Shown here: piece after piece, positions 32,287-64,000 of the stretch
Position numbering within the stretch: the first letter of the stretch is position 1
Layout: each line of letters opens with the position of its first letter
IMG/VR virus record: IMGVR_UViG_3300017917_003143
Coordinates: 62,001-126,000 of that record
DNA length: 64,000 nt
Reading direction: 5' to 3' (one strand)
Notes under the pieces: model-generated
Seen by the model: only the letters and a program-made list of their open reading frames with translations
Told to the model about the DNA's origin: nothing
The model's database searches: none
Program-made: the position numbers and the translations under genes

Positions 32287-32497
32287 AGAAGAAGGTATCA
32301 AAATGGAAGGCACAGTCACGGATGTGCTTCCCAATGCTATGTTCCGTGTAAAAGTGGACAACATTGAAAAAGAAGTCATGGGTATTATTTCTGGTAAGAT
32401 GCGCATGAACAACATCAAAATTCTATTAGGTGATCGTGTAGAAATTGAATTTTCAGCATACGATCTAACCAAAGGACGTATCACACGACGCCGGTAA
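32279..32497 (+). CDS. infA: Translation initiation factor IF-1
   Basis: TTG start; [23 protein letters not shown]...[17 protein letters not shown]...YDLTKGRI. Confidence 0.95.
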
Positions 32498-32505
32498 ATA
32501 GTAGT

Positions 32506-33078
32506 ATGGATACCGCCGCATCAATAGCAGAATTTATCAATTTAGTAGAAGCAACTACTCGTCCAGCCAAGCTGGAAACCACTCCTTTGCCTTATGGCGT
32601 CAAGGACCTTGATCCTGTGATGAGTGAAAAAACGCTGGATTACCATTACGAACATCTGGCCCGAGGTTACGCCAAACGCTACAATGCAGGAGAAGGCAAT
32701 GCGGATTTTAATCGTGCTGGCAGTTTTTTACACAATATGTTCTTCCCTCAGCTTAGGGCTCCTAAAAGCCCAAACCGCCCACGGGGTTCCAGCCTACAAC
32801 TCATTGAAATGAAGTTCAAGGACTTTGATGCTTTCAAAGATGCTGTAAAAGAAACAGCGATGAAAATACAAGGATCGGGCTGGGTGTATCTTTCCACTAC
32901 CGGCGAAATCAAGACCATAAAGAATCATGCTGTGCGCACTGATATAGCCCTACTTATTGATTGGTGGGAACATGCCTGGGCCCTGGATTATCAAAGCGAC
33001 AAAGAATCCTACTTAAACAATATCTGGAAGATCATCAACTGGGACGTGGTCAACGAACGCATTGGTGTGATAGGATAA
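32506..33078 (+). CDS. sod: Fe/Mn superoxide dismutase with N-terminal extension
   Basis: LPY..DLDP, YHY, LHN, DWWEHAW: all four metal ligands present. Confidence 0.9.
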   Translation: MDTAASIAEFINLVEATTRPAKLETTPLPYGVKDLDPVMSEKTLDYHYEHLARGYAKRYNAGEGNADFNRAGSFLHNMFFPQLRAPKSPNRPRGSSLQLIEMKFKDFDAFKDAVKETAMKIQGSGWVYLSTTGEIKTIKNHAVRTDIALLIDWWEHAWALDYQSDKESYLNNIWKIINWDVVNERIGVIG

Positions 33079-33081
33079 AGT

Positions 33082-33405
33082 ATGCAGTTAACGGAATCGG
33101 CGCAGACCAAAATCAAAGACATTTTCGCAGAAGAAAACAACCCCAATCTCAAGCTCAGGGTGTTTGTACAAGGTGGTGGATGTTCGGGTTTCCAATACGG
33201 TTTTACCTTTGACGAAGAAAAAAACGACGACGATTTCAGCCAGGATTATGACGGTGTAGAAGTCCTGATCGATTCCATGAGCTGGCAATATCTACACGGT
33301 GCCACCGTGGACTACAAAGACGATGTCATGGGTAGCAGTTTTGTCATAGAAAATCCCAACGCACAAAGCACTTGCGGTTGCGGTAGCAGTTTCTCACCAT
33401 ATTGA
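33082..33405 (+). CDS. erpA: A-type Fe-S carrier (ErpA/IscA)
   Basis: [10 protein letters not shown] and TCGCGSSF. Confidence 0.92.
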
Positions 33406-33450
33406 TCCAATCAGCCTATTCCGGTAAATATACAAAAGGAATAGGCTACA

Positions 33451-36400
33451 ATGACCCAACAAATCATCAACATTGGTGCGACTCCGGATGATGGAGATGG
33501 CGATAATCTACGCACCGCATTTAACAAAGTAAACGAAAATTTTTCCAATGTTTGGGCACAAGGACCCGTTGATTCCAACATCCGTATACAAGGTAATATT
33601 ATTTCTACCTTGCAGGTCAACCAAGATCTTGCACTCAGCCCCAATGGTGTGGGCAATGTACGCTTAAACAACAACACTATTCCTGGCGCAAATAACACAT
33701 GGTTTTTAGGATCAACTACTAATCGCTGGCGCGGTCTTTTCGTAGGCAATGTCACAGCCGGTAATGTGACCATAAATGATGGACTGACAGTACCCGGTGA
33801 TGCCTACATTGGTGGCAATCTTACTGTGGTGGGCAACACCATACAGATTGGTAATATCACCACAGACACCAAAACTATACAGTTGGCCAACACAGCACTG
33901 ACAGACGGTGCTGCCAACGGTGCCGGCATCACAGTAGGTGCTAACGATGACATAGCCACGTTCCTTTACGAGTCTGGTAACAATGTTTGGACCACAAACA
34001 TTGGCCTACAAGTGGGCGGACCAATCACAGGTACCTCCATTGCAGTCAGCGATGCCACAATCTACGGTAATGTAGACGCTGTCAATGGCAACTTTACAGG
34101 CAATGTCACTGCCAACTATTTCATTGGTGATGGTAGCCAACTTACAGGTATTGAAACTGGTGTAACTATATCTAACACAGCACCTGCATTGGGCAATGGT
34201 GGTGTTTGGTGGAACTCAGTGGACGGTCGTGCCTATGTAAAATACAATAGCCAGTTCATTGATCTTAGCCCCAGTTTGATACCAGATCCCACAACTTATG
34301 TAGGCAACGTGGTATTTGACGACTTGACCATAGAGAACGTGGGCAACATCTTGCCTGCTACGACCAATGCTTATAGTTTGGGCAGTGCCGGTTTCCAGTG
34401 GAAAGACCTCTGGGTATCAAACTCCACCATCTACATGAATTCTGTACCTATTGGGTTGACATCGGCTAATGTTCTCACTGTTAATGGCGAACCCATACTG
34501 TCTAACAACAGCACCACTTCGATCACTACCACAGGCAACATCACAGCTGATTACTTGTTTGGCAACGGTAGCCAACTCACTGGACTCAATACCAACCGAA
34601 TACTCAATGGCACTAGCAATGTAGAGATAGCCACCGCCGATGGCAATGTCACGGTCACAGCCAACGGTTCTTCGACTTGGACTTTTGATACCACAGGTAA
34701 CCTGATCACCCCAGCCAATCTGGTGATTGGTCCTTCTCCTGCTGGCGGTTCGAGCATTCTTCAATATGATTCTGCTCTCCAAGTGGTTGGCGAAGGTGCT
34801 AATGCCATAATGGTCATGGGTTGGGCCGCAAATACCAATGCTCCAGACAGTATAGCGGTAGTTGGATTCAATACTCCATATACCAACGGTGCCAGCAATG
34901 TGCTGATCGCAGTGGGCAACAATGCAACCACTGTCAACTACTGGAACTTTGATGACACTGGCAACTTGTCATTGCCTGCCAATGGCATCATCAGTGATAC
35001 AGCCAACGGCATTGGATTAACTGTTGAAAATCCACCAACCACGATAGATATCATTGGTGCAGATTTTGTTGCAGTGAATTTAACTTACACCAGAGACTTA
35101 GGCGAAGCGACTCCAACCTGGATTCCGGCCGGTTATACTCCGGGTGTTGATCCTTACATAGAGTTCAGTGGCGGCGAATATGGAATCTTTGTTCCAGGAT
35201 TCGGCCAAGCACTCTATGTCAACACTGGAACTATCACGGCTCCGTTGGCACAGTGGAATATCAACCCTCCACTGGGCAGTGTTCCGCCCACAGGTGTGTA
35301 TACCTACAGCAATCCTGAGTGGACCTTTGATGCCACCGGTAATCTAACCATACCTGGAACTCTGATTGTTACCACGGGCATTGTTGGATCTGGGGCTAGC
35401 CCAGCACCCAGCATCAACGGTTTCCTAGATGCGTCATTCATTGGTAATGTTACCGCTGACTATTTCATTGGTGATGGATCACAACTCACGGGCCTGCCTG
35501 CAGGATACACCGACTCAGATGTTGCCAACTTGCTGGCTAACTTTGGCAGCAACTCTATCTCAACTACAGGCAACATTGACTCGGGTAATATCAGCACCAC
35601 ATATATCTATGGCGATACCACTGAAGCCAATGTGTTCCAAGGTGGATCAGCCAACATCGCAGGCAACATCATAGCCGGTAACTTCGTAGGGTCTGGAGCC
35701 AACGTAGACATCGTTGCTGGTAGCTATGACTGGACTTTCGTCAATGATGGCAACTTGGTACTGCCCGGCAACACTTTTGCTGTAAAATACGCCAATGGTG
35801 TAGCAGTGAGCTTGGGCGGCAACTACAGTGATTCAAATGTAGTGTCATTGTTGGGTGCTTTTGGTTCTAATACCATAACAACCACGGGTAATATTAGTGC
35901 AGGTTACTTTGTAGGTAACGGCAGTTTGCTCACCGGCGTGGCTAACTCAGCATTTACTACAGTATCAGCCAATGGTACATCATTGGTAGCAGACAGTGCC
36001 TCGGACACAGTGACATTCACTCCGGGCAACAACTTGGTCATAACAGGCACAGCTGGCACAGACACAGTGACTTTTGCTGTAAACGATGCTCCGACATTTA
36101 CCGGCAACGTCACAGCGCAGAACTTTATTGGTAATATCACTATCACAGGCAATGTCACAGGCACCAGTGCCAACGTTGATATTGTAGCTGGCTCTTATCA
36201 GTGGACATTTAATAATGCAGGTAATCTTGTGTTGCCAGGCAACACATTCACAGTAAACTATGCCAATGGTACAGCAGTATCGTTGGGTGGAGGTGGTGGC
36301 GGCACACCTGGTGGGTCTGATACACAAGTACAGTTCAATGACGGTGGCTCGTTTGGAGGAGATTCTGGATTTACATATAACAAGACTACCGATGCCTTGT

Positions 36401-37896
36401 CAGTGACTGGTAACATCACTGGTGCCAACTTGACCACTGCTGGTAATGTTGCATTTACAGCTAACAGTGGTGCTATAGCATTTAACACTGGTGCTTATAT
36501 CAGTGGCAATGGTGCCCCAATCTCTAGAGAAGGCAGTATTGTTCTATCACCTTACACAGGTGCAGGATCTACATTCCCAGGCGTTGTGATTGGCGGTGCT
36601 GGTAGATTGATTGCTCCAAACGGTGGCGTATTCCAGATATTCAATGCGGCAGATGTTACTTTCCAAGTAGCAACTAAAATAACAGCGGGAACGGCCGCAA
36701 CATCAACTACATCAGGTGCATTACAAGTCACAGGCGGCGCTGGTATAACTGGTAATATCTATGCAGGCGGTAACATCAGCGCAGTCGGCAATACCACAAC
36801 AGGTATTGGTGCTGTGGTAGCTGGTCCTACAAATACCTTGCTGGCCAATACTGTGGCAGGATTCACAGGCAACGTCAACAACTATACACAAGTCACGTTC
36901 CAGAATAAGAACACAGGTGCAGACGCCACTGCTGACTTTATCCTTACAGCAGACAACGGCAACGACTCAACCAACTACGGTGACTTTGGGATCATCAACT
37001 CGGGTTATGATCCCAACACACCTACCAACAGCTTGGGTAACATCGTCTACGCCGCAGATACTTACGTCTACGCACAGGGCAATATCTCTAACACCAGCCA
37101 GGCAGGTGGTAACCTTGTGATAGGTGTGACAACACCAACTAAGGCAGTGAAGATCTTTGCGGGCGGTGTTGATAATAACTATCTTGTGGCCAACATCAGC
37201 AACACTGGTGTTGCTGTCACAGGTGCTGTCAGTGCCACAGGCAACGTCACAGGCAACTATTTCTTAGGCAATATCAGCCAAGCCACAGGCGGTTATGGCA
37301 ATGCCAACGTAGTAGCCAACCTGGCTGCCTTGGGCACTAACCCAATCGTTAGCAACGCTAACATCAGTGGTGCTACCTTGTACTCAACCAATGCTTCAGG
37401 CGACGAAGGTGGTGAAATACAACTGACCAAACCGCCCAATGGTACACTTTCGGGCGGTATAACCATTGATGCTTATCAGAATCGATTCAGAGTATTCGAG
37501 CAGGGCGGAACTGCTAGAGGTATGTATATTGATCTTGCTAATAGCCCTGCTGGTGTAGGAGCAGCCATTGGTTACAGAGACATTCCACAGGTAAGTTTGG
37601 CAGCCAATACCACGATCACTACATCAGATGCTGGCAAACACTACTATTCAACATCAGCATCCGCACTCACACTGACCATAGCCAACAACGCCAGCCAAGG
37701 ATTCCAGATTGGTGCTACTCTTAACATCATCAACCAGGGCGCAGGCAACGTGTCAGTGTTGCGTGGCGTGGGCGTTACCATGTATCTTGCAGGTAACTCA
37801 ACATCATCAGATCGTACGCTGACATCATATGGTGTAGCATCCATCACAAAGGTCTCAACAGATACTTGGTTCATCAGCGGTGTGGGGTTGATCTAA
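33451..37896 (+). CDS. Large tail fibre/baseplate-associated protein
   Basis: T4 gp9/gp10-type N-terminus INIG..PDDGDGDNLR.AF.KVNENF; Gly/Asn/Thr-rich repeats. Confidence 0.8.
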   Translation: MTQQIINIGATPDDGDGDNLRTAFNKVNENFSNVWAQGPVDSNIRIQGNIISTLQVNQDLALSPNGVGNVRLNNNTIPGANNTWFLGSTTNRWRGLFVGNVTAGNVTINDGLTVPGDAYIGGNLTVVGNTIQIGNITTDTKTIQLANTALTDGAANGAGITVGANDDIATFLYESGNNVWTTNIGLQVGGPITGTSIAVSDATIYGNVDAVNGNFTGNVTANYFIGDGSQLTGIETGVTISNTAPALGNGGVWWNSVDGRAYVKYNSQFIDLSPSLIPDPTTYVGNVVFDDLTIENVGNILPATTNAYSLGSAGFQWKDLWVSNSTIYMNSVPIGLTSANVLTVNGEPILSNNSTTSITTTGNITADYLFGNGSQLTGLNTNRILNGTSNVEIATADGNVTVTANGSSTWTFDTTGNLITPANLVIGPSPAGGSSILQYDSALQVVGEGANAIMVMGWAANTNAPDSIAVVGFNTPYTNGASNVLIAVGNNATTVNYWNFDDTGNLSLPANGIISDTANGIGLTVENPPTTIDIIGADFVAVNLTYTRDLGEATPTWIPAGYTPGVDPYIEFSGGEYGIFVPGFGQALYVNTGTITAPLAQWNINPPLGSVPPTGVYTYSNPEWTFDATGNLTIPGTLIVTTGIVGSGASPAPSINGFLDASFIGNVTADYFIGDGSQLTGLPAGYTDSDVANLLANFGSNSISTTGNIDSGNISTTYIYGDTTEANVFQGGSANIAGNIIAGNFVGSGANVDIVAGSYDWTFVNDGNLVLPGNTFAVKYANGVAVSLGGNYSDSNVVSLLGAFGSNTITTTGNISAGYFVGNGSLLTGVANSAFTTVSANGTSLVADSASDTVTFTPGNNLVITGTAGTDTVTFAVNDAPTFTGNVTAQNFIGNITITGNVTGTSANVDIVAGSYQWTFNNAGNLVLPGNTFTVNYANGTAVSLGGGGGGTPGGSDTQVQFNDGGSFGGDSGFTYNKTTDALSVTGNITGANLTTAGNVAFTANSGAIAFNTGAYISGNGAPISREGSIVLSPYTGAGSTFPGVVIGGAGRLIAPNGGVFQIFNAADVTFQVATKITAGTAATSTTSGALQVTGGAGITGNIYAGGNISAVGNTTTGIGAVVAGPTNTLLANTVAGFTGNVNNYTQVTFQNKNTGADATADFILTADNGNDSTNYGDFGIINSGYDPNTPTNSLGNIVYAADTYVYAQGNISNTSQAGGNLVIGVTTPTKAVKIFAGGVDNNYLVANISNTGVAVTGAVSATGNVTGNYFLGNISQATGGYGNANVVANLAALGTNPIVSNANISGATLYSTNASGDEGGEIQLTKPPNGTLSGGITIDAYQNRFRVFEQGGTARGMYIDLANSPAGVGAAIGYRDIPQVSLAANTTITTSDAGKHYYSTSASALTLTIANNASQGFQIGATLNIINQGAGNVSVLRGVGVTMYLAGNSTSSDRTLTSYGVASITKVSTDTWFISGVGLI

Positions 37897-37897
37897 C

Positions 37898-40109: not shown

Positions 40110-40137
40110 CGGTAAATATGAAATAGGGACTAGAAAA

Positions 40138-43717: not shown

Positions 43718-43720
43718 AAC

Positions 43721-53375: not shown

Positions 53376-53543
53376 TGTCAATTCTCCTTTGAACATATTG
53401 TGCGCTACCTCACATAGATATTTAGGTCTCGCAATTTCATTATAACAGACGACAGAATAGTGAAATCTACGTGCTAAGTATTAGGCTCCACTGATCACAA
53501 AACATCAAAAAAACACAAACAGTCAACACGGCTAAATACTGCT

Positions 53544-54149
53544 ATGGAACTCAAAGACGAAAAACTCTTCAAGAACGACCAGGATTATTGGATGGTCGCA
53601 GACAACATCAAAGACCTGTACTTGTCCGATGGTAGTTTGACCACGCTGTTGGATTTTGAGCGTGTGCTTGATGAAATGGATATCTACGCATTTAAAAATT
53701 GGGATCTGGGCGAGCTTGTAGCAGGTCCAGACATTGGCAAGTACAAAGTGGGCTGTATATTCATGTGGCCTGCAGAACTTATGCCCGATCCACGTGGTGC
53801 CCGCAGATTGCTACCTTTTGATTGCGATGTGCGATTTAAAAAGACCAAAATCAAAGTTCCTGTAAAATTACGCACACCTGACGATTTCCGTCCAGGTACA
53901 CACAAAGCCAAGCTCACAGAAAAACCTGTGTGGTTGGTTGAAATCATCATGCCCAAGCACTTGATGAATGACATCAAGACTGGTAGCATAGAACTCGAAG
54001 ATCAGACCATAGATCTCGAAGAGCTGGATCAAGCCTATCAGGAAGATCTGGATCAAGAACAATATCAGGACGCCGGTAACGCCCAAAGCGCACAAGCTCA
54101 GTTGCAGGCACCTTCTCCAGGAGGACTGCCCGGTGCGCCAGCTATCTGA
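53544..54149 (+). CDS. Hypothetical late protein
   Basis: TAAATA-N5-ATG. Confidence 0.6.
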   Translation: MELKDEKLFKNDQDYWMVADNIKDLYLSDGSLTTLLDFERVLDEMDIYAFKNWDLGELVAGPDIGKYKVGCIFMWPAELMPDPRGARRLLPFDCDVRFKKTKIKVPVKLRTPDDFRPGTHKAKLTEKPVWLVEIIMPKHLMNDIKTGSIELEDQTIDLEELDQAYQEDLDQEQYQDAGNAQSAQAQLQAPSPGGLPGAPAI

Positions 54150-54669
54150 AGGACTTAATTACAAAGATCTCGTGGGCATGATGAAGCCCACTATCCACAT
54201 CGACGAATTTTCGTCAAAAATGGGTGACGACGACGAAATCGTTGTTGCTTCTTTCTTTGTGCGCGATCGACAGGCAGCCAAGGATCTTGTCAATTGGTTT
54301 GAAAAGGGCTATGACTTTGTGATAGATTCAGACATGAGTCCTGGTGAAATCAAGCCCAATCGCTATCTTGTGTATGTAGAAATGAAACGCAGATCTACCA
54401 CCGGCGAGCGCCTGAACGAGATCATTGAAGATTTCAGCACTCTCACGGAGTACGAAGGATCAAACTGGGTCATGCACTATCGTGGTAAAGACATTCCTTG
54501 GTCAGTAGAAGCGTTCAACAGCCAAGTGCCAACCAGCCCCAACGAATATCGTAAAAAAGTCGAAAGCGAACTCAATGAAATGCGTCATGCGTCAGGCATT
54601 CCTGTCAAGCAGATCTATGAGCGCGAATCAGACATCAAAAGTTTACAGAGCGCCGCTGGACTGCTGTAA
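54133..54669 (+). CDS. Hypothetical late protein
   Basis: ORF track; LSEG near the N-terminus. Confidence 0.6.
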   Translation: MRQLSEGLNYKDLVGMMKPTIHIDEFSSKMGDDDEIVVASFFVRDRQAAKDLVNWFEKGYDFVIDSDMSPGEIKPNRYLVYVEMKRRSTTGERLNEIIEDFSTLTEYEGSNWVMHYRGKDIPWSVEAFNSQVPTSPNEYRKKVESELNEMRHASGIPVKQIYERESDIKSLQSAAGLL

Positions 54670-54676
54670 ATAGTAG

Positions 54677-55801
54677 GTGACTGACACCTACTGCCCACTA
54701 CCATTCCGACATGTTTTTATCGAGCCCAGGGGAATCAAACCCTGTTGCTCCTACACCAAAATGTTCAACGGCTCAGTTGAACAATGGTTGTCCAGTGCTG
54801 AACTCGCAGAATTACAATCAAACATAAACAGTGGTCAAGTAGACCCAGGCTGCCGTTATTGCATCAATGGTGAAAAACAGGATGGATCCAGCACACGCCT
54901 GGGTGCTATCAGTGACTATGGCGATATTGAAAAGGTCACCGAGATCGATTATGTCGACTATCGATCCATCAATATTTGTAATTTCCGTTGTCGTTCATGC
55001 GATCCTTTTTACAGCAATGGCATAGCTCAGGAAGCTAGGCGCTATCCTGAGCTACAGAAATTCTATCCCATTCCTGAGTACAAAACAGCATCCACACAAA
55101 CACAAGACAAGCAATGGGTGCTGGCCAACATCAACAAGATAAAAAAATTGATGTTTACCGGTGGTGAACCCACACGCATACCAGAAGTCCGAGAAATAAT
55201 CGAACATGTCAGGAACACTGGAAACAGAGATATCTCTATAATGATAACCAGTAATGCCAGCTTTACTGATCCTTACTGGTTTGAAATCACCGAGAGCATG
55301 CCCAACATACATTGGACACTGAGTGTTGATTCTGTGGGCACTGCCGCAGAAATAATAAGAGATGGTACAGACTGGTCAGTGGTCAGCTACAACGTAGAAC
55401 GTATGTTTGACATCTCCCCCAGCGTGAACGTGGGCACTGTGGTCACTAATTTAAACTTGACACAGTTAGATCTATTGTTTGCTTGGGTCAATGATCTCAA
55501 AGAAAAATACGATCACCGAGCCAACGGCCGGACACAGCTGATTGAAATATGCAATTGGCCCCAGTTCCTTAGTCCCTACAACTGGCCCGAAGATCGCAGA
55601 TCAAGCATCGTCACGTTTTTAGAAACTCTTTGCGAGCAAGAGAATCTCCAGGAAAAACAAAAACACATCGCTGAAACACTGCTGTCAAATATAAAAAATT
55701 CCATCCCTGATCCCAAGCTATGGGCCGAGTTTGAATCCTACAATAAAACCCTGGATAATGTAAGAAATCAAGATCACACCCTGCTACTGGAAACACACTG
55801 A
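54677..55801 (+). CDS. Radical SAM protein with twitch-like domain
   Basis: CNFRCRSC, FTGGEP; GTG start. Confidence 0.88.
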   Translation: MTDTYCPLPFRHVFIEPRGIKPCCSYTKMFNGSVEQWLSSAELAELQSNINSGQVDPGCRYCINGEKQDGSSTRLGAISDYGDIEKVTEIDYVDYRSINICNFRCRSCDPFYSNGIAQEARRYPELQKFYPIPEYKTASTQTQDKQWVLANINKIKKLMFTGGEPTRIPEVREIIEHVRNTGNRDISIMITSNASFTDPYWFEITESMPNIHWTLSVDSVGTAAEIIRDGTDWSVVSYNVERMFDISPSVNVGTVVTNLNLTQLDLLFAWVNDLKEKYDHRANGRTQLIEICNWPQFLSPYNWPEDRRSSIVTFLETLCEQENLQEKQKHIAETLLSNIKNSIPDPKLWAEFESYNKTLDNVRNQDHTLLLETH

Positions 55802-55835
55802 TTTTTAACTAAATAACGGGCAAGGAGCAAAAATA

Positions 55836-56453
55836 ATGTCCGTTATCACTAGAGAACAATTAGCACAGTTAATTCCAGGAAATCCCTACATAGATCATTG
55901 GTGCGAAGCACTGAACGAAATATTGCCCGACTATGGCATCGACACACCACAACGTGTGGCTGCTTTCATAGCACAATGCGCACACGAGAGCGGTGGATTT
56001 AAGTTCTTAAAAGAAAACTTAAACTATCGTGCCGTGAGTCTACGCAAGACATTTCCCAAGTATTTCCCCGACGATGCCATCGCGGCAGCCTATGCCAACA
56101 AGCCTCAGATGATCGCTAACAGAGTCTATGCTAACCGCATGGGCAATGGTGACGAAGCATCAGGTGACGGATTCCGTTACTGCGGTCGTGGGTTGATACA
56201 GCTCACAGGACGTGACAACTATGCTTTCTTTGCTGGCAGTCTTGATATCCCCATCGAAGAAGCCGCCGAATACTTGGAAACCTTTGAAGGTGCTGTACAA
56301 AGTGCCTGCTGGTTCTGGGAAACAAACAACCTAAATCAGTGGGCAGACAAAGATGACATCCTTACCTTGACCAAGCGTATCAATGGTGGCACCATTGGTC
56401 TTGAGGATCGCAAAAAACACTACGAGCATGCCAAGCATGTGCTAGGCGTATAA
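55836..56453 (+). CDS. GH19-family endolysin
   Basis: AQCAHESGGF, YCGRGLIQLTGRDNY, INGGTIGL. Confidence 0.92.
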   Translation: MSVITREQLAQLIPGNPYIDHWCEALNEILPDYGIDTPQRVAAFIAQCAHESGGFKFLKENLNYRAVSLRKTFPKYFPDDAIAAAYANKPQMIANRVYANRMGNGDEASGDGFRYCGRGLIQLTGRDNYAFFAGSLDIPIEEAAEYLETFEGAVQSACWFWETNNLNQWADKDDILTLTKRINGGTIGLEDRKKHYEHAKHVLGV

Positions 56454-56457
56454 TACC

Positions 56458-57069: not shown

Positions 57070-57088
57070 TTATTAAAGGAGCAAGGCA

Positions 57089-57595: not shown

Positions 57596-57608
57596 AAAGG
57601 AAAACATC

Positions 57609-57827: not shown

Positions 57828-57843
57828 TCTTGCTTTTACCCAG

Positions 57844-57879
57844 AAAAGGCAGTATAATTAAAAGTATACTGCCTTTTTC
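57844..57879 (+). terminator. Terminator with nested promoter -10
   Basis: 13-bp perfect stem aaaaggcagtata/tatactgcctttt. Confidence 0.8.
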
Positions 57880-57885
57880 TTTGAC

Positions 57886-58680
57886 ATGACAGATTATTAC
57901 CAAACGCTGGGAGTACAGCGCAACGCCACTGATGATGAAATAAAACGAGCATACCGTAAAGCGGCTATGAAGCATCATCCTGACCGTGGTGGTGATCAAG
58001 TCAAGTTCCAGGAGATACAGGAAGCCTATGCTACCTTGGGCGATCCACAAAAACGCCAGCAGTATGACAATCCTCACCCACATGTCCGTATCAATGTCAA
58101 TGGTAATCCATTCCATGGTGGTGCTCCATTTGATTTTGACAGTATATTTGAAATGTTTGGTGCTCGCATGCATCCAAGGCAACAGCAACAGCGCAATCAG
58201 CGCATCAGCATATGGATAACATTGGAAGCGGCGGTGTCAGGTGGTCCTAGGATGATCAGCATCGGGACTCCGCAAGGCAATTCGACCATGGAGATAAACA
58301 TTCCACCGGGCATCAGTGACAACGAAAATGTGCGCTATCCTGGCTTGGCACCAGGAGGACATGATCTCATAATCAACTATCGTGTGCATCCACATCCTGA
58401 ATGGCAACGCAATGGTCTGGATCTTTACTGCGAGCGTACACTGGATTTCTGGCAATTGATCCTGGGCACCACGTTAAAGTTGACCGACTTGCAGGGAAGA
58501 GAATTAGCTCTCACCATTCCACCTCGCTGTCGCCCAGGTACCATCATGCGAGCCCGAGGGCGTGGTGTGGTCAGAGAAGGACACAATCCAGGGGATTTGT
58601 TGATAAAAATACAGGCGTCCATGCCCGAAGATATATCTCAAGAAGTCATTGATATCTTGCAAAAACAGGTCAATAAATAA
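57886..58680 (+). CDS. DnaJ/CbpA-type co-chaperone
   Basis: J domain with HPD; C-terminal domain; no Zn finger. Confidence 0.92.
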   Translation: MTDYYQTLGVQRNATDDEIKRAYRKAAMKHHPDRGGDQVKFQEIQEAYATLGDPQKRQQYDNPHPHVRINVNGNPFHGGAPFDFDSIFEMFGARMHPRQQQQRNQRISIWITLEAAVSGGPRMISIGTPQGNSTMEINIPPGISDNENVRYPGLAPGGHDLIINYRVHPHPEWQRNGLDLYCERTLDFWQLILGTTLKLTDLQGRELALTIPPRCRPGTIMRARGRGVVREGHNPGDLLIKIQASMPEDISQEVIDILQKQVNK

Positions 58681-58684
58681 TTTT

Positions 58685-59134
58685 ATGAAACTCACCAACA
58701 AAGTGCTATACCGGCCAGCCAAACCGTTTACAGAGTTTGATCGCCCCACACAAAACCTATTCCTGGCTGACCAAATGTTTTCGTTTATGAGAAAGAACGA
58801 TGGTATTGGCCTGGCCGCACCACAGGTAGGAATGAGTAAAAGACTGTTTGTCATGGAGATCGCCGCGGTAAAAAGGATCTGTTTCAATCCTGAAGTCATT
58901 GGACACAGCGACGATTTAACCGAATACCCCGAAGGATGCTTGAGTTTTCCTGGAGAAGAGTGTAAAATAAAGAGACCCAGTGCCGTGACTGTGCGTTATC
59001 AAACCGTCGACGGTACATGGGTAGAAGAAAAACTTGATGGTCTGGCAGCTCGTTGTTTCCAACACGAATTAGATCATCTAGATGGAATAATCATGCACGA
59101 TAGAGCAAAGGAACAGAATGCAACAAAATCCTGA
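58685..59134 (+). CDS. def: Peptide deformylase
   Basis: GIGLAAPQVG, EGCLS, QHELDHLDG. Confidence 0.95.
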   Translation: MKLTNKVLYRPAKPFTEFDRPTQNLFLADQMFSFMRKNDGIGLAAPQVGMSKRLFVMEIAAVKRICFNPEVIGHSDDLTEYPEGCLSFPGEECKIKRPSAVTVRYQTVDGTWVEEKLDGLAARCFQHELDHLDGIIMHDRAKEQNATKS

Positions 59135-61388
59135 AATTGAACAGATCCTGGCGCAGGCGCAGAAATTAGCTCGTGCCAAACGACACGAATATGTCACGCT
59201 GGAGCATCTTGCATTGGCCCTGGTACGCCACGCACCTTTTAATACTGTGCTGAAAAAATTTGGCATCATGACCGATGCCCTGGACAATGATTTTGAGATG
59301 TACATCGATAGCCAGATACATCTCAAGTTAGAAGAAGATGCCGATCCCAAGAAAACCAATGCTCTCGAGCGTGTGTTTAATCGTGCCTTGACACAGGTGC
59401 TGTTCACGGGGCGCAGGCAAGTGACCACTATCGATCTGTGGTTGGCCATCATGAACGAAAGCAACAGCCATGCTCATTACTATTTCCTGAAGTATGGCTT
59501 GGACAAGAAAACATTCATTGATTTCTGGCAACAAAACTACTCTACCAAGGGTGGGGTGATCACCGACGAGCAAGCAGACGAGATCCTGGAAGAACACTGT
59601 GTCAACCTCAGCCAGAAGGCCAAAGAAAACAAGCTGGAGCCCTTGATTGGACGAAGCACAGAGCTCAACGAAATCATCACTGTGCTGGCCAAGAAGTTTA
59701 AATCCAACGTGCTCATGGTAGGCGACCCTGGCGTGGGTAAAACTGCCATCGCTGAAGGCCTGGCCACCATGATCCAGCAGGGTAATGTGCCTGAGTTCTT
59801 GAAAGACCACGAAGTATGGTCGTTGGAGATTGGCAGTTTGTTGGCAGGAAGCAAGTATCGCGGAGAGTTTGAAGAAAAGCTCAAAGAAGTGATCATGGCC
59901 CTGGAACAAAAGAAAAACGTTGTGCTGTTTATTGACGAAGCACACACCATGCGTGGTGCCGGAAGTTCCAGCAGTTCCACCCTGGACTTTGCCAACATGA
60001 TCAAACCTGCTATCACCAAAGGTATACTCAAAGTCATTGCATCGACTACATGGGAAGAGTACTACGAGAGCTTTGAAAAGGATCGTGCGCTGATGCGTCG
60101 TTTCTATAGAGTAAGCATCGATGAGCCAGATGCCGCAACCACTGTGCGCATCCTGACAGGACTGCAACCTCGCTTGGAAGAGTTCCACAATGTCACTATT
60201 GATTCCAAGGCCATTGATCGTGCAGTTGAGCTGGCTACTCGCTATCTACATGACAAAAAGAATCCTGACAAATCCATTGATTTAGTTGACGCGGCCTGTG
60301 CCCGTGAACGTGTAAAGGACCTTGGCAAGATCTCGATCACAGCAGAAATGATACAAGACCAAGTGGGTCGAGTAGCCAACATTCCAGCAGATCGTGTCAA
60401 GAACGATGTCAACGCTAAAATCGTAGAGTTGGATTCAAACATCAAACAACGACTGTATGGACAGGACCAAGTGGTCGACAGTGTGCTGGAACGTATCTAT
60501 GTCAACTACGCAGGTATTGGCAGCCAGAAACGTCCGGTAGGCTGTTTCTTGTTCCTGGGCCCAACAGGTACAGGTAAGACAGAGCTGGCCAAGTTACTGG
60601 CAGAGAATCTCGACATGCACATGCTACGCTATGACATGAGCGAGTATCAGGATCGCCACACAGTGAGTTCGTTGTTGGGTGCGCCTCCGGGATTCGTGGG
60701 CTATGATGACAGCCAACTGGGCGGCGGCAAGCTGATCAATGACTTGAGCAAGCATCCATTCTCAGTGATGCTGTTTGACGAAATTGAAAAAGCACATCCT
60801 GATGTGGCCAACATCTTCCTGCAGATGATGGACGAAGGTACCATCACAGGTAGCAATGGCAAAAAGGTTGATGTCAAGAACTGTATCATCATCATGACAT
60901 CTAACTTGGGCGCACGAGACAACGAAAACAACAACATCGGTTTTGGCCAGAGCTTGGAAAAGTCAGGTGAGGAAGACCGTGCCATGAAAGAATATTTCAA
61001 GCCCGAACTACGAAATCGTCTAGACTTGATTTGCAAGTTCAACAAGCTGGATACCCTGTCAATCAAGAAAGTAGTGGTCAAGTTTGTAGACGAACTCAAG
61101 CGCAGTCTAGCAGATCGCCAGATCACCCTGGTGCTCACAGAATCCATGATCGATCATTTGGTCAGTGTGGGTTATGATCCCAAGATGGGTGCCCGTCCAT
61201 TGGGCCGCAAGATCGACGAACTGATCAAAGTTCCGCTGAGTAAGAAGATCTTGTTTGAACGCTTGAAAGATTGTGCAGTCACAGTTGACTGGAACAATGA
61301 CGCTGTGGTGTTTTCACACTCCACAGACAATGCCACACCAGTGGTAGACAAAGATGGAATCATAGTCCTTGAACAACCGAAATCTTGA
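59118..61388 (+). CDS. clpA: ATP-dependent Clp protease ATPase subunit
   Basis: Clp N domain, two Walker A motifs (GDPGVGKT, GPTGTGKT), IGF loop (NIGFG). Confidence 0.93.
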   Translation: MQQNPEIEQILAQAQKLARAKRHEYVTLEHLALALVRHAPFNTVLKKFGIMTDALDNDFEMYIDSQIHLKLEEDADPKKTNALERVFNRALTQVLFTGRRQVTTIDLWLAIMNESNSHAHYYFLKYGLDKKTFIDFWQQNYSTKGGVITDEQADEILEEHCVNLSQKAKENKLEPLIGRSTELNEIITVLAKKFKSNVLMVGDPGVGKTAIAEGLATMIQQGNVPEFLKDHEVWSLEIGSLLAGSKYRGEFEEKLKEVIMALEQKKNVVLFIDEAHTMRGAGSSSSSTLDFANMIKPAITKGILKVIASTTWEEYYESFEKDRALMRRFYRVSIDEPDAATTVRILTGLQPRLEEFHNVTIDSKAIDRAVELATRYLHDKKNPDKSIDLVDAACARERVKDLGKISITAEMIQDQVGRVANIPADRVKNDVNAKIVELDSNIKQRLYGQDQVVDSVLERIYVNYAGIGSQKRPVGCFLFLGPTGTGKTELAKLLAENLDMHMLRYDMSEYQDRHTVSSLLGAPPGFVGYDDSQLGGGKLINDLSKHPFSVMLFDEIEKAHPDVANIFLQMMDEGTITGSNGKKVDVKNCIIIMTSNLGARDNENNNIGFGQSLEKSGEEDRAMKEYFKPELRNRLDLICKFNKLDTLSIKKVVVKFVDELKRSLADRQITLVLTESMIDHLVSVGYDPKMGARPLGRKIDELIKVPLSKKILFERLKDCAVTVDWNNDAVVFSHSTDNATPVVDKDGIIVLEQPKS

Positions 61389-62052
61389 TATAAAAACAGT
61401 CAGCAAAGACCGTTTTTTCTTTGACCAGTACGAATACTGTTTCAATTTTAAATTGGAAGAGTTGAGTGCTCTCCGCGAACTCGATCATGATCACATAGAT
61501 CGAGAGCTGGAGCATAGATCTGTATGGCGACAAAGAAATCCCAATTTCGGTGGGTCTTGGCGCGGACGCCGTGGCGAAATCACAGATCAAAATCGAGTCA
61601 ATTGCCACGCACTGTGTGACTACCTACTGGCACAACAAAACTACAAGTTAGTGATCTACGGGGACTGGGGCTATGTGTACAGCAGTGATCTGTCTATGTT
61701 GAGAAACATGGAACGATTGAGCTATCTGCGTCCTGTGAGCATGAAACGTGTGGTGATAGATCTGCCCAGAGACAGCATACTGATCAGATCCAGCGAGCAT
61801 GAATGGCGCAGTTATTTTCGTGCTGGGCGCATCACTGATCAGCAGAAAGAATCATTGCGTAATTTCCTACACAGCCAGGAAGACATACGCATCGGACCGG
61901 GGCTAAAGAGATTTTTTACCAATTCCAGCAATCATCATTATATCAATGATAATATGTTTATTGATCATAATGGACGGGGCATCGTCATGATGCTGGGCCT
62001 TATTTTTCCCAAGGCCATAAGAAAAACCCTAAAACTCGTACGCGATAAATAA
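61369..62052 (+). CDS. Hypothetical protein
   Basis: ORF track. Confidence 0.5.
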   Translation: MNNRNLDIKTVSKDRFFFDQYEYCFNFKLEELSALRELDHDHIDRELEHRSVWRQRNPNFGGSWRGRRGEITDQNRVNCHALCDYLLAQQNYKLVIYGDWGYVYSSDLSMLRNMERLSYLRPVSMKRVVIDLPRDSILIRSSEHEWRSYFRAGRITDQQKESLRNFLHSQEDIRIGPGLKRFFTNSSNHHYINDNMFIDHNGRGIVMMLGLIFPKAIRKTLKLVRDK

Positions 62053-62219
62053 TTGACTATGGCAAAATTACACGAAGAAATCATTGTAGTCAAAGTCAGC
62101 AAATTGCTCAAGGACAGTGAACAAGCCGCACCCATCATGAGTCCAGAAACAGTGGCCAGTTTAGAAGCAGTAATTCAAGAACTAGCTGGGCAAGCGGTGC
62201 TGGTTGAGATTGCGACAGA

Positions 62220-62582
62220 ATGAAAACCACAGATTTAACTCTGTTACCCTTGACCGTTTATGGAACACCTTCGGGCAACTATGACGGCAGTTCCGACACG
62301 GATTTCGCAGGCGAACGTCAAAAAGCAGTGGACTACTATCGTAGACGCACAGGATTGCAGTCTGTGAGATTTATCACAGCTGGATTCGAAGGCACTATCA
62401 CCATACAAGCCACATTAGACGCTGATCCACAGGATGACGCAGATTGGTTTGATGTTTATGAATTATCAGGGCCTGTTACCACGGATGTTAGTTATCCTAT
62501 CAAGGGCAACTTTACTTGGATACGAGCGTCAGTATCAGGATTCGTCGGCGGCGAAATCACTTCAGTCACTGTCACATATTAA
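62220..62582 (+). CDS. Hypothetical late (probably virion) protein
   Basis: Beta-rich; follows a small late ORF at 62059-62223. Confidence 0.55.
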   Translation: MKTTDLTLLPLTVYGTPSGNYDGSSDTDFAGERQKAVDYYRRRTGLQSVRFITAGFEGTITIQATLDADPQDDADWFDVYELSGPVTTDVSYPIKGNFTWIRASVSGFVGGEITSVTVTY

Positions 62583-62585
62583 CAC

Positions 62586-63020
62586 ATGGAAAAAGTAAAA
62601 TTAAGTCTGGATGTCATCAATTCCTCAGAATTCCATAATATAGGTATAGAATTGTGGCTGGACAAAACAAAATTTTTTGATAATACTGTGAGTCCAGGCA
62701 CACATCATATCATACACGAATTTGAAAGCGACAACAGCGATCATTATCTTAAAATAACACTCAAAAATAAAACCGACCAGCACACTAAAATCAACGAATC
62801 AGGAGAAATCATTTCTGATGCGCTGATCAATATTTCCAACTTAAACTTAGATGAAATAAACATCGATCAGCTCCTGTACGACAAAGGCGAATATATCCAC
62901 AATGGTAACGGTAGTAAAACCATCGCCATACATCCATTTTATGGGGACATGGGGTGCAACGGTCATGTACAACTGAAATTTTCTACTCCAGTGTATCTCT
63001 GGTTGTTAGAGAATATGTAA
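62586..63020 (+). CDS. Hypothetical protein, similar to 979..1503 and 8806..9273
   Basis: Similar layout: ...L.I.L.NKT..hT...G....D.A..I..I... Confidence 0.45.
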   Translation: MEKVKLSLDVINSSEFHNIGIELWLDKTKFFDNTVSPGTHHIIHEFESDNSDHYLKITLKNKTDQHTKINESGEIISDALINISNLNLDEINIDQLLYDKGEYIHNGNGSKTIAIHPFYGDMGCNGHVQLKFSTPVYLWLLENM

Positions 63021-63036
63021 ATCCATAAATACTGGT

Positions 63037-64000
63037 ATGAAAAAATTAGTGATCATCCCTGGTGGATTCCACCCCTATCATGCAGGGCACAAAGCACTGT
63101 ATGATGCCGCACGTGAAGCATTTCCGTCTGCTGATGTCTATGTGGCAGCCACAGATGATACCACAGGACGTCCGTTCCCATTTCGAACAAAGAAATTCTT
63201 GGCCCAGCAGGCAGGCATTCCGGGCAATAGATTTATCCAGGTAAAATCACCTTTCAGTGCTGAAGAAATCACACAGCATTTTGACCCTACGGAAACACAG
63301 TTGATTTTTGTGCGTTCAGAAAAAGATCGCGACCAGAATCCACAGCCTGGACAACCAGGACAGATCGTCACCCGTGGACCACGCAAGGGCATGGCTCCTT
63401 ATTTGCAGCCATACAAGCGCAACGGACTACAACCCATGAAAGATCATGCTTACATGACTTACTTGCCCACTGTGCAGTTTGGTCCTGGCATGACATCGGC
63501 CACAGAAATACGTGCCAAATGGCCTACCATGGATGCCAAACAAAAGGCCGCACTAGCTGGAGTTTTGTATCCTTTGGCTGCCGACAACGAAGCCAAGATA
63601 GCCAAGATAGTAGAAATACTGGACACAGTCATGGGCGGAACTCCAGAAAAAACAGTAGACGAAGCTGTGTTGGTAAATGATCCTGACGCAGGACACCAAA
63701 TCATACCTGATGGTGGCATGGGTACCTGGGACGAAGCTTCCATGGTTTCTAATCTTTCTCGCAAGTTCGCCGACATGGTCAACATGGTCAAGAACAAAAA
63801 CTACACCGGACTACAGTATGTACTGTACAAGGGCGGTGTGGTCAAGAGCTTGGTAGATGCCCTAGCTGAATACGAAGTGTTCATGCAAAAACAAGGCCGC
63901 AGACCCATAGCACGTGGTCGTGAAATAGACATGGGCAAAACTGGAGTGGCCGAGCGTGTGCGTATGCGCATGCCCGTGGACGAAGCTCCGGACTATATCG
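63037..64000 (+). CDS. HxGH nucleotidyl/cytidylyltransferase-like protein, 3' truncated (not in the ORF track)
   Basis: MKKLVIIPGGFHPYHAGH; SATEIR; no stop seen in my translation of the 5' part. Confidence 0.8.
   Translation, partial: MKKLVIIPGGFHPYHAGHKALYDAAREAFPSADVYVAATDDTTGRPFPFRTKKFLAQQAGIPGNRFIQVKSPFSAEEITQHFDPTETQLIFVRSEKDRDQNPQPGQPGQIVTRGPRKGMAPYLQPYKRNGLQPMKDHAYMTYLPTVQFGPGMTSATEIRAKWPTMDAKQKAALAGVLYPLAADNEAKIAKIVEILDTVMGGTPEKTVDEAVLVNDPDAGHQIIPDGGMGTWDEASMVSNLSRKFADMVNMVKNKNYTGLQYVLYKGGVVKSLVDALAEYEVFMQKQGRRPIARGREIDMGKTGVAERVRMRMPVDEAPDYI

What the first reader, a model, noticed from the sequence alone, without database searches (positions are those of the whole stretch)
32495..63039. 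Late genes appear systematically leaderless: TAAATA-N5-ATG without a Shine-Dalgarno
Seen: TAAATA followed by exactly 5 nt and then ATG at SOD (32495/32506), 53533/53544, PDF (58674/58685) and the nucleotidyltransferase (63026/63037); N4 at 54667/54677 and N7 at 62046/62059; no SD in between. Established: the T4 late promoter TATAAATA spans about -13 to -6, which places +1 on the A of ATG. Early promoters show the analogous TATAAT-N6-ATG (13907, 30836; N5 at 16308). Inference: the phage makes wide use of leaderless mRNAs, which may relate to carrying its own IF-1 and PDF.
Basis: partly seen in the sequence, partly recalled or inferred. Interest (0 to 1): 0.6.

Follow-up and report, generated by a model that had tools for sequence, protein, structure and literature searches.

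The report
Promoter-fused, probably leaderless phage genes
In this uncultured 344-kb freshwater phage and its close relatives, about one gene in ten starts directly behind a promoter box with no room for a ribosome-binding leader, so these genes are most likely translated from leaderless mRNAs; phage T4 and phage PA5oct do not do this.

Summary
TAAATA is the most enriched hexamer upstream of genes in the 343,632-bp genome (79 observed, 4.9 expected). Its distance to the start codon is bimodal. In 32 genes it lies 4-9 nt away (peak at 5), and only 1 of these has a Shine-Dalgarno (SD) sequence. There is a trough at 10-15 nt. In 42 genes it lies 16-40 nt away, and 34 of these have an SD.

The genome encodes a gp55-family late sigma factor, and TAAATA precedes tail sheath, tail tube, baseplate, portal and other virion genes. 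It is therefore best read as a T4-type late promoter core. With the T4 geometry (box at -13 to -6), a 5-nt spacer puts +1 on the A of ATG. The base before that ATG is a pyrimidine in 46 of 48 such sites.

Host-type early promoters (TTGACC-N17-TATAAT) show the matching peak at N6. Three related genomes repeat the pattern, and each gene's class is conserved among orthologues. T4 and PA5oct, run through the same pipeline, lack the short class.

"Systematically leaderless" overstates it: roughly 40% of late-promoter-proximal genes are affected, and the abundant virion proteins keep SD leaders. No RNA data exist, so the transcription start sites are inferred.

The parts
32495..32508 (+). TAAATA-N5-ATG module of the Fe/Mn superoxide dismutase gene (32506-33078). 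The TAA of the box is the stop codon of the IF-1 gene.
   Evidence: sequence. (Pfam SOD); there is no other in-frame start before the conserved SOD N-terminus; a TAAATA-N5-ATG site directly follows the IF-1 gene in G002 and G004.
53533..53546 (+). TAAATA-N5-ATG module of a virion structural protein gene (53544-54149). The upstream neighbour is a divergent PhoH-like gene 147 nt away.
   Evidence: all 24 distinct orthologous loci keep TAAATA 4-8 nt before the ATG; the JGI gene call uses the same start.
58674..58687 (+). TAAATA-N5-ATG module of the peptide deformylase gene (58685-59134).
   Evidence: phrog_2890 aligns from residue 4, so the start is correct.
63026..63039 (+). TAAATA-N5-ATG module of a 403-aa protein of unknown family. 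The gene runs past the window end (genome 125037-126248).
   Evidence: No Pfam or PHROG hit.
54667..54679 (+). TAAATA-N4-GTG in front of a radical SAM gene (54677-55801). This is the weakest member: GTG start, and the box TAA is the stop of the upstream ORF.
62046..62061 (+). TAAATA-N7-ATG in front of a 54-codon ORF (62059-62223).
   Evidence: orthologues in G001 and G003 keep N7.
26978..26995 (+). TAAATA-N9-ATG in front of an 87-codon ORF (26993-27256), just downstream of a terminator-like hairpin.
13872..13909 (+). Early sigma70-type promoter TTGACC-N17-TATAAT-N6-ATG with no SD.
16274..16310 (+). Early promoter TTGACC-N17-TATAAT-N5-ATG with no SD.
26487..26524 (+). Early promoter TTGACC-N17-TATAAT-N6-ATG with no SD.
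30801..30838 (+). Early promoter TTGACC-N17-TATAAT-N6-ATG with no SD.
33425..33453 (+). Comparison case, leadered late promoter: TAAATA-N20-ATG with an AAGGA SD, in front of a 1481-aa protein gene (33451-37896).
55810..55838 (+). Comparison case, leadered late promoter: TAAATA-N20-ATG with an AAGGAG SD (gene 55836-56453).
53394..53424 (-). Comparison case, leadered late promoter on the minus strand: TAAATA-N22-ATG with a GAGG SD, in front of the PhoH-like gene (52644-53396).
32281..32497 (+). Phage-encoded translation initiation factor IF-1. The probable start is TTG at 32281, preceded by an AAGGA SD.
   Evidence: PF01176, 74 bits.

Best explanation
TAAATA is the core of this phage's late promoter. 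It is read by host RNA polymerase carrying the phage's gp55-family sigma factor, and transcription starts about 6 nt after the box, as at T4 late promoters.

In about 40% of the genes directly behind such a box (32 of about 76 in this genome; 23-32 per genome in three relatives), the start codon sits 4-9 nt after the box, most often exactly 5 nt. The mRNA then begins at the A of AUG, or within about 3 nt of it, and cannot carry an SD. These mRNAs would be translated by the leaderless route, in which a 70S ribosome with fMet-tRNA binds a 5'-terminal AUG.

About 10 early genes use the same architecture behind host sigma70-type promoters (TATAAT-N6-ATG).

The remaining late promoters carry minimal leaders: the box lies a median of 24 nt before the ATG, with an SD in between. 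This leadered class holds the high-copy virion proteins. Leader or no leader is therefore probably a fixed, gene-specific setting of translation yield.

Shown:
- the motif, its spacing, the absence of SD and the conservation of each gene's class
- the presence of the sigma gene and the association of the box with virion genes.

Inferred:
- that the box is a promoter
- the position of +1
- the leaderless mode of translation.
For: 1. Motif. TAAATA is the top upstream hexamer (79 observed, 4.9 expected). 86 of its 147 copies fall in the 7% of the genome that is non-coding.

2. Bimodal spacing. Counts at N4-N9 are 5, 15, 3, 5, 2, 2. Only 2 sites fall at N10-15, then a broad class runs from N16. 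An SD is present in 1 of 32 short-class genes against 34 of 42 long-class genes (Fisher P 2.7e-12). The start codon is ATG in 31 of 32 short-class genes.

3. Start-site signature.
- The base before the ATG is a pyrimidine in 46 of 48 pooled N5 sites.
- It is a pyrimidine in 98 of 116 short-class genes, against 47% of other genes (P 1.8e-16). This is the -1 pyrimidine / +1 purine preference of bacterial RNA polymerase.
- In the leadered class, A peaks at the 6th position after the box (86 of 162), and the pyrimidine-purine pair peaks at positions 5/6.

4. Sigma factor. A gp55-family sigma is encoded (T4 gp55 E 2e-6; phrog_12791 E 1.6e-77 and phrog_234 E 7.5e-23). It sits next to a gp47-like SbcD gene, behind a sigma70-type promoter and an SD leader.

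5. Late genes follow the box.
- Short class: portal, gp25-like baseplate wedge and virion structural proteins.
- Long class: tail sheath, tail tube, gp6-like baseplate wedge, head-tail adaptor and tail fibres.

6. T4 geometry. The first T of the 8-bp box is at -13 (PMC2988020).

7. Independent promoter class. TATAAT with a TTGACC -35 box peaks at N6, one base more than the late box, as expected because a sigma70 -10 hexamer ends at -7.

8. Context. 9 of 32 short-class genes face a divergent gene only 23-147 nt away, and 3-4 lie just after terminator hairpins. Their mRNAs must therefore start within that short space.

9. Start codons are right. Family profiles align to the N-termini of PDF, portal, radical SAM and SOD. 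Only 5 of 34 genes have any downstream in-frame start with an SD, which is not above background. The JGI gene call agrees for 53544.

10. Conservation.
- All 24 distinct orthologous loci of the 53544 gene keep the box at N5 (14), N7 (8), N4 (1) or N8 (1), while the flanks and the N-terminal length vary.
- Three related genomes reproduce the bimodality.
- Orthologue class is conserved: short stays short in 41 of 57 pairs and becomes long in 1; long stays long in 59 of 73 pairs and becomes short in 2 (Fisher P 7e-42).

11. Negative controls. The same pipeline finds TAAATA as the top hexamer in T4 and PA5oct, but only 2 and 7 short-class genes against 31 and 54 long-class genes.

12. Accepted criterion. 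A -10 box located 6-8 nt from gene starts is the computational signature of leaderless transcription used by GeneMarkS-2 for its group C genomes (PMC6028130).
Against: - No transcription start site, RNA or protein data exist. The only public run that holds this DNA is a pond metagenome.
- In about 13 of 32 short-class genes a same-strand ORF ends within 20 nt upstream, sometimes using the TAA of the box. Re-initiation from polycistronic read-through transcripts could then also feed these start codons.
- For N7-N9 spacers the mRNA would carry 1-4 leader bases, or polymerase would have to start further downstream. Most N7 spacers have an A at the 5th spacer position, which hints at a 3-nt leader rather than none.
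- Neither T4 gp45 nor the Pfam clamp families found a gp45-type sliding clamp, and gp33 was not sought. The full T4 late transcription apparatus is therefore not demonstrated.
- Gene calls and SD scoring come from my own simple model. About half of all genes lack a recognisable SD at the longest-ORF start, partly because of start errors.
- If the host is proteobacterial, leaderless mRNAs are usually translated poorly there.
Confidence: 0.7

Rival explanations
1. The short-class genes are translated mainly as internal cistrons of longer late transcripts. Ribosomes terminating at the upstream stop re-initiate at the nearby ATG without an SD (70S scanning). The adjacent TAAATA is then a weak internal promoter, or merely supplies the stop-codon context.
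For: - About 13 of 32 short-class genes have a same-strand ORF ending within 20 nt upstream.
- At 32495 and 54667 the TAA of the box is that stop codon.
- IF1 is described as strongly stimulating 70S scanning (PMC9031893), and the phage encodes IF-1.
Against: - 19 of 32 have no such neighbour. 9 face divergent genes and 3-4 follow terminators.
- Coupling does not need a fixed hexamer at a fixed 5-nt distance, nor a pyrimidine at -1.
- The same hexamer sits at variable distance in front of SD-led virion genes.
- The early TTGACC-N17-TATAAT-N6-ATG sites show the same logic with an unrelated box.
Confidence: 0.13
2. TAAATA acts at the RNA level in both classes, either as an A/U-rich ribosome-recruiting enhancer or as an endonuclease processing site. 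It would not be a promoter.
For: - The motif is A/U-rich, like S1-binding or RNase E-type sites.
- No transcript ends have been measured.
Against: - In the leadered class the motif lies 16-40 nt upstream, at variable distance and outside the SD, which is not how an enhancer behaves.
- Short-class genes that face a divergent gene only 23-24 nt away need a promoter in that space.
- The motif equals the core of the T4 late box, the genome encodes the matching sigma family, and in T4 the same pipeline picks out the same hexamer.
- If it were a processing site, cleavage would still yield leaderless mRNAs.
Confidence: 0.07
3. The pattern is an artefact: chance co-occurrence in A/T-rich intergenic DNA, or wrongly chosen start codons with the true SD-led starts lying downstream.
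For: - Gene starts come from a home-made ORF model.
- A/T-rich hexamers are generally enriched between genes.
Against: - Shuffle and Poisson tests reject chance.
- Ten other hexamers built from A and T (nine of them A4T2 like TAAATA) show no peak.
- Profile alignments and N-terminal conservation fix the starts.
- Downstream starts with an SD are no more frequent than background.
- The pattern repeats in four genomes and is conserved among orthologues, but is absent from T4 and PA5oct under the same pipeline.
Confidence: 0.03

Closest known systems
T4 late promoters (TATAAATA) read by gp55, with gp33 and the gp45 clamp
   Same: - An A/T-rich box at the -10 position with no -35 element.
- A gp55-family sigma is encoded, next to a gp47-like gene as in T4.
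- The box precedes virion genes on either strand.
- TAAATA is also the top upstream hexamer in T4 under my pipeline.
   Different: - Only the 6-nt core TAAATA is conserved; the 5' TA is not.
- The sigma is about 298 aa against 185 aa in T4.
- No gp45-type clamp was detected.
- T4 has essentially no box-to-ATG fusions: 2 short-class against 31 leadered genes.
Thermus thermophilus phage phiYS40, whose middle and late mRNAs are mostly leaderless
   Same: A large myovirus that makes most of its middle and late transcripts without leaders and is reported to tilt host initiation factors (IF2 up, IF3 down) in their favour (PMC3594737).
   Different: - Its host phylum, Deinococcus-Thermus, itself uses leaderless mRNAs widely (PMC6028130).
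- phiYS40 has no gp55-type late system that I know of (from memory, not tested).
- Here the host is probably a betaproteobacterium, only about 40% of late units are affected, and the phage carries its own IF-1.
Leaderless transcription in bacteria (GeneMarkS-2 'group C': Actinobacteria, Deinococcus-Thermus) and the classic lambda cI mRNA from PRM
   Same: - A -10 box lies 6-8 nt from the start codon.
- There is no SD and AUG is strongly preferred.
- SD-led genes coexist with leaderless ones in the same genome (PMC6028130; PMC9031893).
   Different: - Here two different promoter classes are involved: a phage late sigma and a host-type sigma70.
- It is a feature of a virus genome, not of the cell.
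- Group C genomes are rare among Proteobacteria (5.6%).
PA5oct, Rak2-like phages, Atu_ph07 and XaC1: the jumbo phages sharing this long gp55-like sigma
   Same: - The sigma is 37-43% identical.
- The sigma and SbcD genes are neighbours.
- TAAATA is also the top upstream hexamer in PA5oct.
- PA5oct also carries an initiator-like tRNA.
   Different: - There is no enrichment of TAAATA-N5-ATG over the reversed-pattern control in PA5oct, Vibrio phage 2.275.O, fHe-Yen9-04 or XaC1.
- PA5oct has 7 short-class against 54 leadered genes.
- None of the four checked here (PA5oct, Vibrio phage 2.275.O, fHe-Yen9-04, XaC1) encodes IF-1.
- The PA5oct transcriptome paper reports only TTGAC/TATAATA promoters (PMC7318152).

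Membership tests
T4-type (gp55-dependent) late promoter system | The phage encodes a gp55-family sigma factor | tested here: met
   T4 gp55 matches G000:273442-273717 at E 2e-6. The ORF hits phrog_12791 at E 1.6e-77 and phrog_234 at E 7.5e-23.
T4-type (gp55-dependent) late promoter system | An 8-bp TATAAATA box at -13 to -6 and no -35 element | tested here: inconclusive
   The 6-nt core TAAATA is invariant by construction and highly enriched. The two 5' positions are not conserved and no upstream element is seen. This is a shortened variant of the box.
T4-type (gp55-dependent) late promoter system | The box precedes virion (late) genes | tested here: met
   Tail sheath, tail tube, gp6-like and gp25-like baseplate proteins, portal, head-tail adaptor, tail fibres and virion structural proteins all follow it.
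T4-type (gp55-dependent) late promoter system | Sliding clamp (gp45) and co-activator gp33 | tested here: inconclusive
   T4 gp45, PF09116 and PF02916 found nothing in the genome; a divergent clamp could be missed. gp33 was not searched.
T4-type (gp55-dependent) late promoter system | Transcription starts about 6 nt after the box | not testable with these tools
   No RNA run holds this sequence. Indirect support comes from the pyrimidine at -1 and A at +1 in 46 of 48 N5 sites, and from the A peak at the 6th position in leadered sites.
Leaderless mRNA | [quoted passage not shown] | not testable with these tools
   Inferred only, from the box-to-ATG spacing and the T4 geometry.
Leaderless mRNA | No Shine-Dalgarno sequence upstream of the start | tested here: met
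   1 of 32 short-class genes has an SD against 34 of 42 long-class genes. In the three relatives, 0-1 short-class genes per genome have one.
Leaderless mRNA | Strong preference for AUG as start codon | tested here: met
   31 of 32 in this genome and 107 of 116 pooled over four genomes.
Leaderless mRNA | A -10-type promoter box located 5-8 nt from the start codon (GeneMarkS-2 group C criterion) | tested here: met
   The late box peaks at N5 and the sigma70-type box at N6. The criterion is described in PMC6028130.
phiYS40-like reprogramming of initiation factors | The phage shifts initiation-factor balance in favour of leaderless mRNAs | not testable with these tools
   Only gene content could be checked. 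IF-1 is present in 5 of 6 clade genomes and 0 of 5 outgroups. An initiator-like tRNA is present, but PA5oct has one too.

The most novel reading that the evidence does not exclude
This freshwater jumbo-phage clade has made leaderless initiation a regular expression channel in a proteobacterial host that rarely uses it. The phage would support that channel with its own translation kit: IF-1, placed directly in front of a leaderless gene, an initiator-like tRNA that lacks the usual three G:C pairs in its anticodon stem, and perhaps the tmRNA. Phage mRNAs would then be privileged over host mRNAs, or kept insulated from them, late in infection.
Probability: 0.2. Interest if true: 0.8.

Novelty: new variant of a known kind. 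Interest (0 to 1): 0.6.

Why it matters
Leaderless mRNAs in phages are known from single genes such as lambda cI, and from phages whose hosts already favour them (Thermus, actinobacteria).

Here a T4-type late transcription system is fused to the start codons of about 30 genes per genome, and a further 10 or so early genes are fused to host-type promoters. This is conserved gene by gene across a clade of 300-350-kb freshwater phages and is absent from T4 and PA5oct.

If transcription starts are confirmed, three things follow:
- The clade would be a natural system for studying how leaderless translation is made efficient, including a possible role for a virus-encoded IF-1.
- There would be a rule for correct start-codon calling in these metagenomic genomes.
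- There would be compact promoter-plus-start modules whose translation yield appears to be set by whether a leader is present.

Tried and rejected
- **Close relatives in the phage collection:** megablast of a 4.4-kb gene found none. tblastn of a tail-fibre-like protein gave only short N-terminal matches.
- **RNA evidence:** I therefore did not use read laying, because DNA contigs cannot show transcript ends.
- **Exact-protein look-up:** The look-up of encoding contigs returned only the source contig.
- **Non-coding RNA in the window:** Rfam found no family and there are no tRNAs.
- **Sliding clamp:** T4 gp45 and the Pfam clamp families found nothing.
- **Host or origin of the SOD gene:** the ESM Atlas look-up returned only viral clusters.
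- **Literature:** the primary phiYS40 transcription paper (PMC1885378) is not held, so a review is cited instead. The PA5oct paper does not mention leaderless transcripts.
- **A-richness and weak folding after the ATG:** the short class does not differ from the leadered late class (P 0.30 and 0.61), so I make no claim from these.
- **Initiator-like tRNA as a clade-specific correlate:** rejected, because PA5oct has one too.


Full report
**What the window is.** The window is bases 62001-126000 of a single 343,632-bp contig. It is an IMG/VR virus record assembled from a pond metagenome and estimated 99% complete. GC content is 45%. My ORF and dicodon model genes, 355 of them on the + strand, covering 93% of the sequence. 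The genome has a T4-type major capsid protein (PF07068, E 3e-100), tail sheath, tail tube, baseplate and portal genes, and 32 tRNAs plus a tmRNA. It is therefore a jumbo myovirus with T4-like modules.

**The observation.**
- In the window, TAAATA-N5-ATG occurs 4 times against 0.6 expected; 0 of 100 shuffles reached 4.
- The early form, TTGAC-N(17-19)-TATAAT-N(5-7)-ATG, occurs 4 times against 0.01 expected.
- Genome-wide, TAAATA-N5-ATG occurs 18 times against 2.8 expected (P 1.5e-9) and N7 occurs 9 times. Other spacings are at background.
- Ten control hexamers built from A and T (nine with the same A4T2 composition) show no such peak.

**What TAAATA is.**
- It is the most enriched hexamer in the 60 nt upstream of gene starts (79 observed, 4.9 expected). 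It ranks ahead of the SD words and of TATAAT.
- 86 of its 147 copies touch the 7% of the genome that is non-coding.
- The genome encodes a gp55-family late sigma at genome 272941-273837 (T4 gp55 E 2e-6; phrog_12791 E 1.6e-77 and phrog_234 E 7.5e-23). The sigma gene lies next to a gp47-like SbcD gene, behind a TTGACG-N16-TATAAT promoter and an AGGAG leader.
- The genes that follow TAAATA include tail sheath, tail tube, the gp6-like and gp25-like baseplate proteins, portal, head-tail adaptor, tail fibres and several virion structural proteins.
- As a control, the same pipeline applied to T4 returns TAAATA as the top hexamer (39 observed, 9.8 expected). That is the core of the known T4 late box.

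I therefore read TAAATA as the late-promoter core of this phage. This is an inference, but a strong one. The two 5' bases of the T4 octamer are not conserved here, and G is avoided just after the box.

**The spacing.** The distance from the end of the box to the start codon is bimodal.
- N4 to N9 have 5, 15, 3, 5, 2 and 2 genes.
- N10-15 together have 2 genes.
- A broad class begins at N16.
- A recognisable SD is present in 1 of 32 short-class genes and 34 of 42 long-class genes (Fisher P 2.7e-12). The start codon is ATG in 31 of 32 short-class genes.
- The trough has a simple explanation. A leader that begins about 6 nt after the box needs roughly 10 more bases to hold an SD and its spacer.
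- In T4 the first T of the 8-bp box is at -13 (PMC2988020).

**Features that point to transcription initiation rather than translation.**
- Pooled over four genomes, the base before the ATG in N5 sites is a pyrimidine in 46 of 48 cases.
- Over the whole short class it is a pyrimidine in 98 of 116 cases, against 47% in other genes (P 1.8e-16). This is the -1 pyrimidine / +1 purine preference of bacterial RNA polymerase.
- In the leadered class, A peaks at the 6th position after the box (86 of 162), and the pyrimidine-purine pair peaks at positions 5/6.
- The host-type early promoters carry a conserved extended -35 element (GGTTGACCAGAAA), then N17 and TATAAT. They show their own short class, peaking at N6 with no SD, and a leadered class from N17. 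The one-base shift between N5 and N6 is what the different ends of the two boxes (-6 and -7) predict.

**Context.**
- 9 of the 32 short-class genes face a divergent gene only 23-147 nt away, and 3-4 lie directly after terminator-like hairpins. Their transcripts must begin in that short space.
- About 13 have a same-strand ORF ending within 20 nt. At 32495 and 54667 that ORF uses the TAA of the box as its stop. For these, re-initiation from read-through transcripts is a possible second route.

**Are the start codons right?**
- Family profiles align from residue 4 of PDF and of the radical SAM protein, and from residue 41 of the portal against profile position 43.
- The SOD has no other in-frame start before its conserved N-terminal motif.
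- Only 5 of 34 short-class genes have any in-frame start with even a 4-nt SD in codons 2-40. The figure for leadered genes is 9 of 41.
- The JGI gene call for the 53544 gene uses the same ATG.

**Comparative evidence.**
- The 53544 gene has relatives on 35 IMG/VR contigs (63-88% identity).
- In all 24 distinct upstream sequences, TAAATA sits at N5 (14), N7 (8), N4 (1) or N8 (1) before the ATG. The flanking sequence, the spacer sequence and even the length of the protein N-terminus differ.
- I fetched three related genomes of 300-353 kb. Each shows TAAATA as the top hexamer, 23-32 short-class genes with 0-1 SD, a trough, and an SD-rich long class.
- Among reciprocal-best-hit orthologues, short stays short in 41 of 57 pairs and becomes long in 1. 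Long stays long in 59 of 73 pairs and becomes short in 2. Genes without a box become short in 9 of 532 pairs (Fisher P 7e-42).
- The architecture is therefore a conserved, gene-specific property.

**Scope.**
- T4 has 2 short-class and 31 leadered genes. PA5oct has 7 and 54.
- PA5oct, Vibrio phage 2.275.O, fHe-Yen9-04 and XaC1 share the long sigma at 37-43% identity. None of them shows an excess of TAAATA-N5-ATG over the reversed-pattern control.
- The fused class is therefore special to this freshwater clade.

**Which genes are in the short class?** It mixes low-copy virion parts (portal, gp25-like wedge, minor structural proteins) with enzymes (SOD, PDF, two radical SAM proteins, a metallophosphoesterase, an HNH endonuclease, a cytidylyltransferase-like protein) and many unknowns. 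Sheath, tube and the gp6-like protein have SD leaders, and the major capsid protein has a very strong SD. I infer that a missing leader sets a lower translation yield. This is not shown.

**Translation factors.**
- IF-1 is encoded directly upstream of the SOD gene (PF01176, 74 bits).
- It is present in 5 of 6 clade genomes and in none of 5 outgroup phages. In G002 and G004 a TAAATA-N5-ATG site again follows it directly.
- A review states that IF1 and IF2 stimulate leaderless translation in vitro, that extra fMet-tRNA strongly enhances it, and that IF1 strongly stimulates 70S scanning (PMC9031893).
- The phage also has a tRNA with the initiator-type C1xA72 mismatch, but so does PA5oct.
- G005 has the sharpest N5 peak but no detected IF-1; it is 86% complete.
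- The link between IF-1 and the trait is therefore suggestive only. Nothing ties PDF to it.

**Host.** The phage tmRNA is a permuted, two-piece form that matches Rfam beta_tmRNA over its full length (124 bits against a threshold of 84). The SD and the early promoters look like those of ordinary Gram-negative bacteria. A betaproteobacterial host is likely but unproven. Genomes with frequent leaderless transcription are rare among Proteobacteria (5.6%, PMC6028130), which makes the phage's habit more notable.

**Known precedent.** Thermus phage phiYS40 makes most of its middle and late mRNAs leaderless and shifts IF2 and IF3 levels (PMC3594737). Lambda cI is the classic single case. A -10 box 6-8 nt from the start is the accepted computational mark of leaderless transcription. 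I found no report of this for gp55-type late promoters or for this phage group.

**Verdict.** Transcription start sites are still unmeasured.
- Confidence that TAAATA is the late-promoter core: about 0.85.
- Confidence that the short class yields leaderless or near-leaderless mRNAs: about 0.7.

**Limits.** Gene calls, SD scoring and orthology come from my own scripts. The relatives are metagenomic contigs.

Noticed in passing
genome G000:C1:203303-203716 (outside the window; L156:14770-15183): The phage encodes a permuted two-piece tmRNA with tag ANDEVYALAA. It matches Rfam beta_tmRNA over its full length (124 bits). Similar genes with tags ANDELYALAA and ANDEQFALAA are in G001 and G003. This points to a betaproteobacterial host.
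   Followed up: partly
genome G000:C1:188959-189033 (outside the window): A tRNA with anticodon CUA, which would read the amber stop codon TAG; ARAGORN labels it 'Pyl'. TAG is the rarest stop codon (29 of 418 genes, against 219 TAA and 170 TGA). The standard code gives 93% coding density, so I saw no sign of recoding and applied no other genetic code.
   Followed up: partly
genome G000:C1:204409-204483 (outside the window): One of three tRNA-CAT genes has the bacterial initiator hallmark, a C1xA72 mismatch, with CGCGGAG at its 5' end and CTCCGCAACCA at its 3' end. It lacks the three consecutive G:C pairs in the anticodon stem. Equivalent genes are in G001, G003 and PA5oct.
   Followed up: partly
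window 10270-10331, 11160-11224, 22600-22661, 23140-23197, 25280-25338 and other early promoters: The early promoters form a repeated cassette. It has an extended -35 element (GGTTGACCAGAAA), then TATAAT, and in the leadered copies a conserved stretch close to ATAGGTATAGTAA before the SD. That conserved leader could be a regulatory or RNA-level element.
   Followed up: no
window 32281-32497: The IF-1 gene probably starts at a TTG (32281) preceded by an AAGGA SD, not at the upstream ATG (32198). This gives an N-terminus with the [12 protein letters not shown] pattern, which from memory resembles cellular IF-1. My gene model missed this gene.
   Followed up: partly
G001:C1:128574-128684: There is a second, partial IF-1-like stretch (profile positions 29-64) interrupted by a TAA, about 1.6 kb downstream of the intact IF-1 gene in relative G001. 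It may be a decayed duplicate.
   Followed up: no
N7 sites, for example window 62046-62061, genome 282348 (portal) and orthologues in L007, L010, L013, L014: The N7 subclass is conserved as N7, not N6. It usually has an A at the 5th spacer position and a pyrimidine just before the ATG. This suggests either a fixed 3-nt leader or a second allowed start distance.
   Followed up: partly
window 59118-61388; 54677-55801 and genome 12446-13528; 52644-53396: Host-like auxiliary genes lie around the sites. They include a 756-aa ATP-dependent protease with AAA+ ATPase matches (phrog_4871, E 7e-233), two radical SAM proteins (both in the short class) and a PhoH-like ATPase.
   Followed up: no
genome 287030-287079 (outside the window): The major capsid gene has an unusually long purine-rich SD (AGGAAGGAAGAAGGAG) and no adjacent TAAATA, so it seems to be an internal cistron. 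A 46-codon ORF just downstream (288349) follows a terminator hairpin and a TAAATA-N5-ATG.
   Followed up: no
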